64,000 nucleotides of DNA from positions 24,650 through 88,649 of the forward strand of contig JAWQFM010000019.1 in the NCBI GenBank assembly GCA_033442325.1, given 5' to 3'. Origin of the DNA: Salpingoeca rosetta. Lineage: Eukaryota; Protista; Choanoflagellata. Each line of letters opens with the position of its first letter. Positions within the stretch are counted from its first letter, which is position 1. The notes beneath the pieces were generated by a model that saw nothing but the letters and a program-made list of their open reading frames with translations, ran no database searches and was not told the origin of the DNA. Both the position numbers and the translations under genes were made by a program. Shown here in pieces: positions 37,257 through 53,355 of this stretch.

Positions 37257-44453
<7,197 letters not shown>

Positions 44454-49220: not shown

Positions 49221-49521
49221 CCTCTTCCTTTGAGGTCCAAACGATGATGTACACACCGTGCACGCGCACTGACATTCACGCATGCACCAGCCAGTGGATC
49301 AACCCACAAGCACCACTGCTCTGCTGTTGCTTTCCTTTGCTTGCTTGCCCAAAACGCGTCCTTCCTTGTTTGTGTTTGCGTTGTTGGCGATTGGTTGGAG
49401 ATTTGTGTTAATTTTCGCCTGGCTGCCAACACAACAGCCGCAAGCATCTCGTCATCAGCACGCCACGCACAAGCACACACCACCAACACCATCATCGCCA
49501 GCAGCCTCTGCGTTTGCCGTC

Positions 49522-50713
49522 ATGTCTGGGATGATGAACAAGGGCGGGCGGATTGTGGAGCAGCCACGGGACTTGATGCGAGCACAGGTGGCCATGCGGC
49601 CCCATGTGTTGAGTGAACAGTGGCGCCAGAAGAATCCAAACGCAGCCAGTACAAGCATGCCGCTCAACGCGTACGTGGCCGAGTGGCAGTGGCACACCGG
49701 CACCATCTCAGCACAAGCAAACGCCGAGCCAGTTCGAGTCACAAAGGGGTTTCAAGGTGTGTGTCTGTGTGTCTGTCTGTGTGTGTGTCTGTCTGTCTGT
49801 GTTGTCTGTGTGTGTGTGCCAGTGTGTACCTGCATCTACGTGTCTGTCTGTCTGTCTGTCTGTGAACAAGTGAACCAAAATGGCTGCCTTTCCCTGTGTG
49901 GGCTGCTTTCTTCACCCTGCTTTCTTCACCCTGCTTCTCCTCACCCTGCTTCTCCTAACCCTGCTGTCCATCTCCCTGCTGCCCATCATTCATACCTTAG
50001 ACACGGCCACGAACGGAATCGCTGCGGGTGAAATTCTGCTTCTTCACGCCAAAGTCAAGGACCGAAACATGATGTGCCAAGACGTGTATGGTCACCGCTT
50101 CGTCATTTCACTCGCGTGCAAGGCCCCATTCGTAAAGGTGCGTGCGCTTAGTTTCATGACCGTGAACACCCCTAGCTCTTTTGCGTCAGCGTTGCACCTG
50201 ATGTGAATTGGGCGTGGCGACAACGCTTGTGCCTCATGCACACACACACGCCCAAGCGCACGCGCGCACACATATGTGCACACTTCAACAATACCCCCAC
50301 CACCACCTGGCCACGCTCACATGCCCTTGACACCACTTGCTCTGCACAGCTTGCGGTGAACCTGGGCATTGCGCCCAAGGAGTGGAGTAAACAGCTGCCC
50401 GTTCTGTCACGCGACCCGCACCCGCGCCCCATCACGTCCTTTCTCAAGCGCGACGGAACCCTGGTGCGATGCACGTGCGAGTTGTATACACGACTGTGTG
50501 TATGTGTGTTCAACACTTGCCTTCTTCGCCGCAGCCATTCATTTCCCCCCCCCCACTGACTTGCTCACGTGCGTTTACATGTGTGCTCACACGACTCGAT
50601 TGCAGGACGAACCCATCGCCGTCGCGCTCGCATCTGAGGTGACGAACCGCGGTGTGGCAAAGGCAAACTGCATCGTCTTCCTCAGGTCCGTTGTGTGTGT
50701 GTGTGTGTTGTGT

Positions 50714-50756
<43 letters not shown>

Positions 50757-51374
50757 GTGTGTGTGTGGGCGTGTGTGTGTGTGTGTGTATGTGTGTGTGT
50801 GGGCATGCGTATGGTCGTGGATGAGTACATCCACAGCTGTGTGTGGATGCTTCCGTACACGTGCTTCCCATCCCCTGTTTGTCAACTCACACCACCCCCA
50901 TTTCTCGACCAATTTCCACGCCTCTCCTCCTTCATGCTCATGCCGCATTTCTCCCATGGCATTTAGCGTAAACAACGACGCCATAGTCGTCTGCTCTTCG
51001 CAACGCGAGGTGAGATGCAAGGAGGCACACGACCATACGATCACATAAGCACAACCACATGCACGCAACCGCACACAGACACACATATGCAAAGAAATGC
51101 AACCCGCTCGTCGCTCACCCACGATAACGCGTGCTCGTGCCCCCTTCCCCTTTTTATCGCCACCTCCATCATCACCACCATCACCACCATCAGCCCCAGC
51201 ACGCTGCCTCGTCGCCCAGCCTGATTGCACTTCCGCTGGATGCAGATGTGCGCGTGTGTGCGGTGCCGCCGTCAGAGGCGCATCACGAGTACGACGTGAG
51301 CTGGGGCACAGACTACGACGTCACCGTGGTGCGTGCACACAAAACGTAACACATGGTGTATTTGTATGTGTGTG

Positions 51375-51441
<67 letters not shown>

Positions 51442-51736
51442 ATGAAATTCCCCATGCACCGTTGCTTCTCTGGTCAACACTGCTCTTGGACCATTATCAT
51501 GTTGTTCCTTAATTGTCGTTGCAGCCCATTGTCTCACATTCACATGTGTGTGTGTGTGTGTGTCATCAGGGCGCCGTCTCTGACTCGGATCTGCGGAGAA
51601 TCGGACATCGCATCCACTCCGACGCGCAACTTAGCATCAACAGCCGCATCCAAGCCGCCACCAAACGCCGCCCGCGCGCTAGGCAGCAGGTGCGCATCCA
51701 ATGCGGAGCAAATCATGATGAACAAGGGAGTTGTGT

Positions 51737-51786
<50 letters not shown>

Positions 51787-52797
51787 GTGTGTGTGTGTGT
51801 GTGCTTGTGTGTGCTTGTGTGTGTGTGTGTGCGTGAGTGCTTACTTTCCAGTACATTGACTAATATGCCGTCTTCCTCCACCACCACCACTACTACTCCA
51901 CCAAATCACCACCACCACCACCACCACCACCACCAGCAGCAGCAGCAGCAGTCGCCCTCGGGTCCGCGTCGCGCGTCGTCGAGCGAGGACGTGAGCCGCC
52001 GCCCCCGCTGGTCCCTGTTCGGCGGTGATCGCGATGGCGGTGATGGTGGTGGTGTTGATGGCCGCACACGAGGGAAGAAGAAGAACAAGAAGGGCGCGCG
52101 CAGTGGCGGCGATCAGTTCCCGCTGCGCAGCTACCCCTCCGCTGGTCAGTTGCAGTCCGGTGGTCAGGCAGGCCGCGTCATTGCCCTCCCACCGCCATCA
52201 TCCTCATCCTCACACCACCACCACCACCACCACCACCAAGCAGCGCCACTCGCGTCGCCATCGTCAGCGCCAATGCGAGGCCTTCCACCATCCAATACCA
52301 ACAACCACTGGGGCGACGACGACGATGACGACGACGATTATGTTCGCCCTGTGCCGCTGGCTGGGCGGTACGCGAGTGCTGATGACCTGCTCACGTCGGA
52401 TGGATACATGGCACCGCAGCACCTGCCACGAGGGGAGGCGGAGGAGGTGTACTCTGTCGCCAACATCAACACCAGCGGTGTGGACCCGTTCAAGTACAAC
52501 AAGACGGCGCACGCACATGCCAACAGCAGCACCAGCAACAGCACCAGCAACAGCAGGAGTCAACGGGCCGTGCCACCCCCTGCCAGCAGTCGCGTTGGCG
52601 GTGGCGATGTGGCTGCTGCTGTGGGCGGAGTAGCGCCACCGCCACCGCCAGCATCGCGTGCTGCTGTCCCGCCGACGCTTCCAAAGCGCACACATCAGCA
52701 GCAGCAGCAGCAGCAGCAGCAAGGCGGTGGCGATGAGGAGGAGTTTGGGTTTGGTGCTGGCACCATGGACCTGAACAGCCAGTGGCGCTGCCAATAA
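49522..52797 (+). CDS. Putative CABIT-like domain signalling adaptor with a disordered Tyr-motif/Pro-rich C-terminus, 8 exons
   Basis: Spliced [57 protein letters not shown]...[11 protein letters not shown]...[12 protein letters not shown]. The tail contains [21 protein letters not shown] and PPTLPKR. Confidence 0.6.
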
Positions 52798-53355
52798 TGA
52801 TGATGACGACGACAACGACGACGTGTTGCTGCAGTCGCTCGGCACAATGCAGCTTGGAGAACGGATGGAGCGTCCACCGCCACGAAAACCGGAACACATT
52901 TACGGCGTCACTTGCACAGAAAATGACACATGCGTGTCTTGTTTGTCGTGTGTGTGTCTGTGTGTGCGTGTGTGCGTGTGTGCGTGTGCGTGTGCTTGGT
53001 TGCTCGTTTGTGTCGATGTCTGTGTCTGTGTCTGTGTGGACGCGCCGGTGTGCGTTTGCGTGTTTGTTGTCTGTGTGCAATTCCTTGGGGCCATTCTTAG
53101 GATGTTTTCGATGTGCTGTGCATTGCTTTTGCTCGATTGTGTTAACCCATACATTTTGTTGTGCACAAGCATGCATGCGTGTGGTCTGGCCACCGATTTC
53201 CTTTGTCATCATCAATAGATTCTAGCTCTAATCGCGTCACAGCATTGACACAACCCACCCACCAATATATGAGCGTGGCATCTCAAAGCTCGCGCGTTCG
53301 CATGTGTTCGGTCATTGCAGAGGGAAGAGCACACACCACACGTTTGCATTGCCAG

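What the first reader, a model, noticed from the sequence alone, without database searches (positions are those of the whole stretch)
49522..52797. Candidate pre-animal Themis/GAREM-type adaptor: CABIT-like domain, Grb2-type PxxPxR and phosphotyrosine docking motifs
Seen: once spliced, the N-terminal half is a beta-rich globular region with the pattern PVRVTKG-x8-GEILLLH-x7-MCQD-x3-HRFVISL-x4-F, then VVCSS...[12 protein letters not shown]. The last exon is disordered and carries acidic-preceded tyrosines ([12 protein letters not shown] about 52315-52350, DGYMAP about 52400, EEVYSVA about 52441) and SH3 ligands ([23 protein letters not shown] about 52669). Known: CABIT domains, described from animal Themis, GAREM and Serrano, have a similar P-x-V-x-V...G-x-x-L-x-L/I-H...I-P-L...F pattern, and in Themis/GAREM they combine with a Pro-rich Grb2 site and pTyr sites linked to SHP phosphatases. 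Inference: this may be a unicellular holozoan member of that module, which would place a CABIT-Grb2-phosphatase signalling system before animals.
Basis: partly seen in the sequence, partly recalled or inferred. Interest (0 to 1): 0.8.

Follow-up and report, generated by a model that had tools for sequence, protein, structure and literature searches.

The report
Choanoflagellate CABIT-domain adaptor-like protein
This expressed gene of the choanoflagellate Salpingoeca rosetta encodes a very divergent CABIT domain, the fold of the animal signalling adaptors Themis and GAREM that papers call animal-only, followed by a disordered tail whose docking motifs are plausible but unproven.

Summary
The stretch 49522-52797 (+) is the eight-exon gene PTSG_07280 of Salpingoeca rosetta, 574 aa. 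My exon coordinates translate exactly to the database protein. Spliced transcript contigs from two studies and stranded RNA-seq confirm every exon, including the LIALPLD exon.

The CABIT reading is supported, but indirectly:
- The protein itself gives no Pfam CABIT hit, and only five relatives exist among 1.84 billion representatives.
- Three of those relatives carry choanoflagellate labels: Choanoeca perplexa, C. flexa and S. urceolata.
- Two relatives have a C-terminal SAM domain, the GAREM layout. One of them, of unknown organism, passes Pfam's CABIT cut-off (28.4 bits against 24).
- Family profiles link all members at E 1e-12 to 1e-23.
- A good AlphaFold model of the relative that passes the cut-off matches CABIT clusters at TM 0.56-0.61 over the whole domain; everything else scores 0.29 or less.
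- Its partial neighbours among solved structures (FeoA, IdeR, an integron cassette protein, Hck SH3) are the kinds reported for the THEMIS CABIT2 crystal structure.
- Language-model features place all three tested members with CABIT.

The tail motifs (acidic tyrosines, two PxxPxR/K sites) exist but are only weakly enriched and weakly conserved. Binding to Grb2 or SHP is inference only. Papers from 2024-2026 still call CABIT exclusive to metazoans, so this moves its origin before animals.

The parts
49522..49756 (+). Exon 1 (residues 1-78 plus one base). The start codon is the first ATG in the transcript. Ends inside the PVRVTKGFQ strand of the domain.
   Evidence: Spliced translation equals P0001. 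Transcript contigs cover 49425/49437-49753, and the reads show RNA from the + strand.
50001..50137 (+). Exon 2: the first SH3-like unit of the CABIT-like domain ([10 protein letters not shown]...MCQD...HRFVISLAC118KAPFVK), including the Cys that is invariant in the family.
   Evidence: Contig pieces cover 49999-50135, and a GT..AG joint 50135>50348 is seen in reads and contigs. Alignments A1-A3 show Cys118 invariant. An environmental fragment, P0003, is 61% identical here.
50350..50463 (+). Exon 3: linker with short helices inside the domain ([16 protein letters not shown]...), including the invariant Trp136.
   Evidence: Contig pieces cover 50348-50462, with a joint 50462>50605. Alignment A2.
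50606..50685 (+). Exon 4: the strand-helix element [12 protein letters not shown] and the start of the long hairpin (ANCIVFL).
   Evidence: The 133 nt of the transcript contig between pieces 50462 and 51203 equal 1 + 80 + 43 + 9 nt, which fits exons 4, 5 and an exon 6 start at 51194. Exact translation.
50967..51009 (+). Exon 5: [10 protein letters not shown]208SSQRE, the long beta strand with the VVVC cysteine. That Cys is conserved in the S. rosetta and Choanoeca proteins and is Met or Ala in the SAM-bearing relatives.
   Evidence: RNA depth in bin 50912-51035 and zero depth in the flanking intron bins. Alignment A1.
51194..51328 (+). Exon 6: [25 protein letters not shown]..., the last strands of the domain.
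   Evidence: Contig pieces cover 51203-51328 in X4 and X6. The acceptor at 51194 fits both the contig length and the annotated protein.
51570..51689 (+). Exon 7: C-terminal helices of the domain and the basic stretch KRRPRAR.
   Evidence: Contig pieces cover 51570-51689. Helices are predicted in both models.
51937..52797 (+). Exon 8, including the stop codon: a disordered tail of about 285 aa, only 14% hydrophobic. It holds:
- Gln, His and Asp runs;
- PSGPRR (residue 295) and RRASSS (299);
- the basic cluster KKKNKK (334-340);
- Tyr423 (D8-YVRPVPL), Tyr445 (DGYMAP) and Tyr460 (EEVYSVA);
- PPTLPKR (534).
   Evidence: Translation and motif scan. RNA contigs cover 51963-52185 and 52250-52686. No Pfam family matches.

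Best explanation
PTSG_07280 is a transcribed Salpingoeca rosetta gene for a cytoplasmic scaffold or adaptor-like protein.

Shown or strongly supported: residues about 55-290 form one very divergent CABIT domain. This is the two-subdomain, mostly beta fold with an SH3-like unit that is known from animal Themis and GAREM. The rest of the protein, about 285 residues, is a disordered tail.

Inferred mechanism: as in Themis and GAREM, the CABIT domain would act as a protein-protein interaction platform. In Themis it clamps the C-terminal SH3 domain of Grb2 and engages SHP-1. The tail would supply short linear motifs:
- class II SH3 ligands (PSGPRR, PPTLPKR);
- acidic-context tyrosines (Tyr423, Tyr445, Tyr460) that become SH2 docking sites once phosphorylated by one of the many choanoflagellate tyrosine kinases;
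- a basophilic RRxSS site.

The gene belongs to a small choanoflagellate family. Two relatives carry a C-terminal SAM domain, the GAREM architecture: one from S. urceolata and one of unknown organism. The S. rosetta and Choanoeca branch has no SAM domain.
For: Gene and expression:
- Exact exon model and protein identity.
- Spliced transcripts in two studies and stranded RNA-seq.

Family:
- The exhaustive HMMER search of 1.84e9 representatives finds only five relatives. They are Choanoeca perplexa (E 1.2e-15), C. flexa, S. urceolata, a Logan transcript and an ENA fragment.
- With the search space set to the full 1.84e9 proteins, a profile of P0001, P0002 and P0004 hits P0005 at 9e-24 and P0006 at 8e-14. 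The reverse profile hits P0001 at 4e-12.

Link to CABIT:
- P0005 scores 28.4 bits on PF12736 against a cut-off of 24 and also carries SAM_1/SAM_2. P0006 has a weak CABIT hit (E 0.02) plus SAM.
- ESM Atlas features for the N-domains of P0001, P0002 and P0005 score 0.91-0.92. CABIT clusters make up 24-29 of the 40 hits, and the next set of hits scores 0.80 or less.
- The Atlas's own model of P0001 matches CABIT clusters at TM 0.47 over residues 40-290, against 0.31 or less for others.
- My independent but poor AF2 model of P0001 still has a CABIT cluster as its best shape hit (TM 0.40 against 0.27 or less).
- The AF2 model of P0005 is good (pLDDT 73, pTM 0.58). It matches CABIT clusters at TM 0.56 over 175 aa and TM 0.61 over 194 aa, the latter a mollusc SAM+CABIT cluster. 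Others score 0.29 or less.
- Both models show the same order of secondary-structure elements.

Partners and tail:
- Homologues of Grb2 and Shp2 are reported in Salpingoeca (PMC7260276).
- The tails of P0001 and P0005 align weakly, starting at DYVRPV / EYMQPV (score 68 against 47 +/- 7 for shuffles, P about 0.01).
Against: - P0001 itself has no Pfam CABIT hit even at E <= 10, and no animal CABIT protein appeared in its HMMER search at E <= 1e-3.
- The family profile finds no solved structure by sequence.
- The P0001 model is of low confidence (pLDDT 46), and its TM scores stay under 0.5.
- Pfam's local match in P0005 maps the N-terminal unit to profile positions 165-233, a register I could not reconcile with the whole-domain shape match.
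- I could not identify which Cys, if any, corresponds to the conserved CABIT cysteine.
- P0005, the one relative that passes the Pfam cut-off, comes from an unknown organism.
- Tail motifs: acidic tyrosines are not enriched in P0001 (P = 0.20). There is no YxN, PxRPxK or PxxxRxxKP motif, motif positions are not conserved, and S. urceolata P0006 has no tyrosine or PxxP motif in its linker.
- There is no evidence of phosphorylation or binding.
Confidence: 0.78

Rival explanations
1. A choanoflagellate-specific domain built from two interwoven SH3-like or Tudor-like barrels. It would resemble CABIT only by convergence or through very ancient common ancestry of SH3-like folds, and would serve another role, for example as a nuclear Tudor-like reader with a basic nuclear localisation signal.
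For: - No direct Pfam hit for P0001.
- Foldseek finds partial matches of the P0005 model to the hybrid Tudor domains of KDM4A/B (prob 0.5-0.77).
- The Atlas structure rows include SGF29 Tudor and KDM4C.
- The family profile brushes Crk SH3 at E 0.4.
- A basic KKKNKK cluster sits in the tail.
Against: - The Tudor, SH3 and FeoA matches cover only 55-85 residues. The CABIT clusters align 175-194 of 235 residues at TM 0.56-0.61, twice the score of any other family.
- P0005 passes Pfam's curated CABIT cut-off.
- CABIT fills 24-29 of the 40 feature hits for three members.
- The SAM fusion reproduces the GAREM architecture.
- The same SH3, FeoA and IdeR neighbours are reported for genuine CABIT2.
Confidence: 0.12
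2. A genuine CABIT-domain protein whose tail is low-complexity filler. It would not be a phosphotyrosine or SH3 docking adaptor. The CABIT domain would do something unrelated to Grb2 or SHP in choanoflagellates, and the adaptor role arose only in animals.
For: - Tail motifs are at or near chance level (P 0.03-0.2) and are not conserved by position.
- P0006 has none.
- The tail is dominated by Ser, Gly, Pro, Ala, Gln, His and Asp runs.
- The biochemical role of CABIT is unsettled even in Themis.
Against: - Three of the four full-length relatives have acidic tyrosines plus at least one PxxPx[RK] in the tail.
- The tails of P0001 and P0005 align better than shuffles around the [DE]Y[VM]xPV motif (P about 0.01).
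- Grb2 and Shp2 homologues exist in Salpingoeca.
Confidence: 0.35
3. An annotation artefact: a chimeric or mis-spliced model that joins an unrelated N-terminal gene to a low-complexity ORF.
For: The last exon lies inside a 566-aa open frame that runs through intron sequence. The exon 7/8 junction sits in a CAG repeat, and the transcripts have one CAG fewer there.
Against: - Single transcript contigs in two studies run from exon 1 into exon 8 (49437-52185).
- The intron bins have zero RNA depth.
- Choanoeca P0002 has the same layout of domain plus long tail.
Confidence: 0.02

Closest known systems
GAREM1/GAREM2 (FAM59A/B): single CABIT domain, proline-rich Grb2 sites, Tyr sites for Grb2/SHP2, C-terminal SAM
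   Same: - A single N-terminal CABIT-type domain followed by a long disordered region with PxxPxR/K and acidic tyrosines.
- Relatives P0005 and P0006 add the C-terminal SAM domain, which gives the full GAREM layout.
- The best shape match of the family is a mollusc SAM+CABIT cluster (TM 0.61).
   Different: - PTSG_07280 has no SAM domain.
- Its domain is about 235 aa, against about 344 aa predicted for GAREM.
- Sequence similarity is too low for a direct HMM hit.
- No binding data exist.
Themis/Themis2: tandem CABIT1-CABIT2, PxRPxK proline-rich sequence, disordered tail (PDB 9i3p)
   Same: - A mostly beta domain with an SH3-like unit and extended hairpins.
- The neighbours among solved structures (FeoA, IdeR, 3g1j, Hck SH3) match those reported for CABIT2.
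- A proline-rich, basic segment directly follows the C-terminal helices of the domain.
- A disordered tail.
   Different: - One CABIT domain, not two.
- No PxRPxK or PxxxRxxKP motif.
- Themis clamps Grb2 SH3C between two CABIT domains, which a single domain cannot do in the same way.
Hybrid (interdigitated) tandem Tudor of KDM4A/B; FeoA and the IdeR/DtxR SH3-like domains
   Different: These cover only about a third of the domain. There is no sequence signal and the biological contexts are unrelated.

Membership tests
CABIT domain (Pfam PF12736) | Direct match of the protein itself to the family profile | tested here: inconclusive
   P0001, whole, as 1-290 and in pieces, gives no PF12736 hit at E <= 10. 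A missing HMM hit does not exclude a distant member.
CABIT domain (Pfam PF12736) | Sequence homology to accepted CABIT proteins, direct or through intermediates | tested here: met
   The chain runs P0001 to P0005, then P0005 to PF12736.
- P0001 to P0005: phmmer E 1.9e-4 in 1.84e9 proteins, and family profiles at 4e-12 to 9e-24.
- P0005 to PF12736: 28.4 bits against a cut-off of 24.

Weak points: the Pfam match is local (residues 17-78 against profile positions 165-233), and the organism of P0005 is unknown.
CABIT domain (Pfam PF12736) | Fold: two interwoven, mostly beta subdomains, one SH3-like and one with extended beta hairpins | tested here: met
   - P0005 model (pLDDT 73): TM 0.56-0.61 to CABIT clusters over 175-194 of 235 residues, and 0.29 or less to others.
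- P0001: the Atlas model gives TM 0.47 and my AF2 model TM 0.40, with CABIT best both times.
- Both models are beta-rich, with two 16-17-residue hairpin strands and the same order of elements.

For P0001 itself the models are of low confidence. No solved Themis structure was in the PDB copy searched.
CABIT domain (Pfam PF12736) | The conserved buried cysteine (Themis Cys152 / Cys413) | tested here: inconclusive
   Two candidates exist:
- Cys118 (DCP), invariant in all family members;
- Cys208 (VVVC), which is Met or Ala in P0005 and P0006.

No residue-level alignment to Themis or GAREM could be made, so equivalence is open.
GAREM-type adaptor | C-terminal SAM domain | tested here: not met
   No SAM hit in P0001. 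SAM_1/SAM_2 are present in the relatives P0005 and P0006.
GAREM/Themis-type adaptor | Proline-rich Grb2 SH3 ligand | tested here: inconclusive
   Two PxxPx[RK] sites (295 PSGPRR, 534 PTLPKR) are present, P = 0.03 against shuffles. There is no Themis-type PxRPxK and no PxxxRxxKP. Binding cannot be tested with these tools.
GAREM/Themis-type adaptor | Tyrosines that are phosphorylated and recruit Grb2 SH2 or SHP phosphatases | not testable with these tools
   Candidate sites are Tyr423, Tyr445 and Tyr460 in acidic context. P0001 has no YxN, and enrichment is not significant (P = 0.20). This needs phosphoproteomics and pull-downs.
Themis family | Tandem CABIT1-CABIT2 | tested here: not met
   There is only one globular domain. 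Residues 291-574 are low-complexity, 14% hydrophobic, and match no family.

The most novel reading that the evidence does not exclude
The CABIT domain, and the GAREM-type layout of CABIT, docking linker and SAM, arose before animals, in the common ancestor of choanoflagellates and animals. There it already worked with Grb2-like and SHP-like proteins in phosphotyrosine signalling. PTSG_07280 would be a SAM-less descendant that can be studied genetically in S. rosetta.
Probability: 0.3. Interest if true: 0.7.

Novelty: new member of a known kind. Interest (0 to 1): 0.6.

Why it matters
Structural papers from 2024-2026 still describe CABIT as found exclusively in metazoans (PMC13381594; bioRxiv 10.1101/2024.10.01.616165). 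No held paper mentions CABIT together with choanoflagellates.

A choanoflagellate CABIT family, some members with SAM, moves the origin of this poorly understood fold to before animals. It also adds a scaffold class to the pre-animal phosphotyrosine toolkit.

The biochemical role of CABIT is debated even in T cells. S. rosetta is a simple organism in which genes can be manipulated and which has a single CABIT domain, so the ancestral partner could be tested there: Grb2-like SH3, an SHP-like phosphatase, or something else.

The divergent sequences would also sharpen CABIT profiles. Current Pfam misses this protein entirely.

Tried and rejected
- Pfam scans of single exons, of the whole protein and of halves found no CABIT for P0001.
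- Three word-index protein searches, including one with a family alignment, returned only the protein itself.
- Sequence and profile searches of the PDB found no Themis, only sub-threshold Crk SH3 and gelsolin.
- Foldseek against the PDB gave nothing significant for either model. The library, with releases up to 2026-04-08, appears to hold no CABIT structure.
- Three attempts to deepen the alignment from JGI metagenomes failed. The single-protein scan and the Choanoeca-pair scan found no relatives.
- A test for an internal repeat between the two halves of the domain was not significant (hhalign E 0.22).
- My first splice guesses were corrected against the protein and the transcripts. These were an exon 6 acceptor at 51200 or 51220 and an exon 8 acceptor at 51852.
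- I could not fetch any animal Themis or GAREM sequence, so no direct profile-profile comparison or residue-level alignment to CABIT was made.
- I could not find out which organism P0005 (Logan SRR28720658/59) comes from.
Full report
**What is there.** The window is Salpingoeca rosetta genomic DNA. The last exon retrieves the 574-aa hypothetical protein PTSG_07280 at 100% identity (P0001).

I rebuilt the gene from GT-AG sites and corrected two acceptors against the protein. Eight exons, when joined, translate exactly to P0001:
- 49522-49756
- 50001-50137
- 50350-50463
- 50606-50685
- 50967-51009
- 51194-51328
- 51570-51689
- 51937-52797

The finding's start and end are the start and stop codons.

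**Expression.** Transcript contigs of 1257 and 1267 nt from two different studies (X4, X6) carry exons 1-8 joined, including the LIALPLD exon. The lengths of the unplaced contig segments fit exons 4 and 5 and the acceptor at 51194. Two stranded RNA-seq runs (X21, X22) cover the exon bins, give zero depth in the intron bins, and have the read orientation expected of a + strand RNA. Transcripts carry one CAG fewer at the exon 7/8 junction, which is either an alternative acceptor at 51940 or a repeat-length difference. The frame is unaffected.

All are present, with two small spacer miscounts. The N-terminal 290 residues are 32% hydrophobic. The last 284 residues are 14% hydrophobic and consist largely of Ser, Gly, Pro, Ala, Gln, His and Asp runs.

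**Is the N-half a CABIT domain? Direct tests fail.**
- Pfam gives no PF12736 hit for P0001 at E <= 10, whether whole, as 1-290 or in pieces.
- phmmer against PDB sequences finds nothing.
- The word-index searches find only the protein itself.

**The exhaustive search finds a small family.** The HMMER scan of 1.84 billion representatives finds five relatives and no more:

| Protein | Source | Length | E-value |
|---|---|---|---|
| P0002 | Choanoeca perplexa | 513 aa | 1.2e-15 |
| P0003 | ENA metagenome fragment, 61% identical to exon 2 | 113 aa | 2.1e-08 |
| P0004 | Choanoeca flexa fragment | 186 aa | 1.2e-05 |
| P0005 | Logan transcript, organism unknown | 489 aa | 1.9e-04 |
| P0006 | Salpingoeca urceolata | 396 aa | 3.6e-04 |

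They align over about 200 residues. The consensus is VRV.KGF.G....S.AAGDIL.L......D....C.D..G....IS.DCP..FV ... W ... PLP.VVAL..EV ... DC.VF.....Q.VVVC ... P.LL.LP..A.V.V.

With the search space set to the full 1.84e9 proteins, a profile of the three SAM-less proteins hits P0005 at 9e-24 and P0006 at 8e-14. The reverse profile hits P0001 at 4e-12. Homology within the family is secure.

**The link to CABIT comes from the two SAM-bearing members.**
- P0005 scores 28.4 bits on PF12736, above the curated cut-off of 24, and has a clear SAM domain at its C-terminus.
- P0006 has a weak CABIT hit (E 0.02) and SAM.

CABIT, then a linker, then SAM is the GAREM architecture.

**Three further lines agree.**
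- *Language-model features.* ESM Atlas features put the N-domains of P0001, P0002 and P0005 with CABIT clusters. Scores are 0.91-0.92, CABIT takes 24-29 of 40 hits, and the next set scores 0.80 or less.
- *Shape.* The Atlas's own model of P0001 matches two CABIT-bearing clusters at TM 0.47 over residues 40-290, with 0.31 or less for the rest. My AF2 model of P0001 is poor (pLDDT 46), yet its best Atlas shape hit is again a CABIT cluster (TM 0.40 against 0.27 or less). The AF2 model of P0005 is good (pLDDT 73, pTM 0.58, five concordant models). It matches a chordate CABIT cluster at TM 0.56 (175 aa) and a mollusc SAM+CABIT cluster at TM 0.61 (194 of 235 aa). Nothing else exceeds 0.29. The two AF2 models share the same order of strands, long hairpins and helices.

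The PDB copy searched seems to hold no Themis structure, so no direct superposition was possible.

I put the probability that this is a genuine, very divergent CABIT domain at about 0.8.

**Open points on the domain.**
- Pfam's local match in P0005 maps residues 17-78 to profile positions 165-233 of 255, while the shape match is whole-domain. This may be a cross-match between the two SH3-like units of CABIT or a register problem. An internal repeat is not detectable by sequence.
- I could not decide whether the invariant Cys118 or the partly conserved Cys208 corresponds to Themis Cys152/Cys413.
- P0005's organism is unknown. The choanoflagellate origin of a CABIT+SAM protein therefore rests on S. 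urceolata P0006.

**The tail.**
- P0001 has three acidic-context tyrosines: 423 D8-YVRPVPL, 445 DGYMAP and 460 EEVYSVA.
- It has two PxxPx[RK] sites: 295 PSGPRR and 534 PTLPKR.
- Against shuffles of the same tail these give P = 0.20 and P = 0.03.
- P0002 and P0005 show similar content. P0002 has EEYGFLPDYNNL and PPTPPER. P0005 has GEYMQPV, EEEYEYVPL and PAVPPR. P0006 has none.
- Only the P0001 and P0005 tails align better than shuffles (68 against 47 +/- 7, P about 0.01), starting at DYVRPV / EYMQPV.
- P0001 has no YxN, no Themis-type PxRPxK and no PxxxRxxKP.
- An RRxSS site directly after the domain is shared by P0001 and P0002.

The motifs are real and compatible with an adaptor. They are neither strongly enriched nor conserved by position.

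**Mechanism.**
- Shown: an expressed protein with one CABIT-type domain and a long disordered tail.
- Inferred from family knowledge: in Themis the CABIT domains and a proline-rich sequence clamp Grb2 SH3C and engage SHP-1 (PMC13381594). GAREM uses proline-rich sites and tyrosines for Grb2 and SHP2. Homologues of Grb2 and Shp2 are reported in Salpingoeca and Monosiga (PMC7260276).

The most likely role is a scaffold in phosphotyrosine signalling. I give the adaptor mechanism itself about 0.4.

**Novelty.** Papers from 2024-2026 state that CABIT occurs exclusively in metazoans. No held paper combines CABIT with choanoflagellate terms. The database entry for PTSG_07280 carries no domain. This is a new, distant member of a known family in a lineage where the family was not recognised. 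It moves the family's origin to before animals.

**Earlier notes of this scan.** They hold only the same first-reader note and unrelated SHP2-motif leads elsewhere in this genome. None was used.

Noticed in passing
window 49757-49864, 50692-50801, 51363-51439, 51739-51839: Four of the seven introns of this gene carry long (TG)n/(GT)n or TGTC-type microsatellites, all in the same orientation. A similar array lies in the 3' flank (52931-53038).
   Followed up: partly
window 49498, 50011, 52606: All RNA runs differ from the reference at three places: an extra CAG after 49498 in the 5' UTR, G>A at 50011 (synonymous, Thr82) and G>A at 52606 (Asp512Asn). These are strain differences or reference errors.
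   Followed up: partly
window 51937-51962: Transcript contigs carry 23 nt where the annotated exon 8 start gives 26. That is one CAG (Gln) fewer, from either an alternative acceptor at 51940 in the CAG run or a repeat-length difference.
   Followed up: partly
P0001 residues 295-305; P0002 residues 252-263: A basophilic RRxSS(E) site directly after the domain is shared by the S. rosetta and Choanoeca perplexa proteins ([12 protein letters not shown] / SPYRRRSSEP). It may be a Ser kinase or 14-3-3 type site. Both proteins also end in an acidic FGxG motif.
   Followed up: no
P0005 (loci L001, L002) and P0006: Two relatives combine the CABIT-like domain with a C-terminal SAM domain, the GAREM layout. 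P0006 is from Salpingoeca urceolata. P0005 is from Logan transcript contigs SRR28720658/59 of unknown organism.
   Followed up: partly
P0003 (ENA contig of 691 nt): An environmental fragment encodes a 46-residue stretch 61% identical to exon 2, embedded in a mis-called ORF. It probably comes from a close relative of S. rosetta in a metagenome.
   Followed up: no
model of P0005:1-235: The CABIT-like model partly resembles the interdigitated hybrid Tudor domains of KDM4A/B (Foldseek prob 0.5-0.77, TM by target 0.5-0.6). This hints that CABIT's two interwoven SH3-like units share that kind of strand-swapped topology.
   Followed up: no
window 37257-44453: Another first-reader note on this window describes an ADAM17-like sheddase gene upstream. 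I did not examine it.
   Followed up: no
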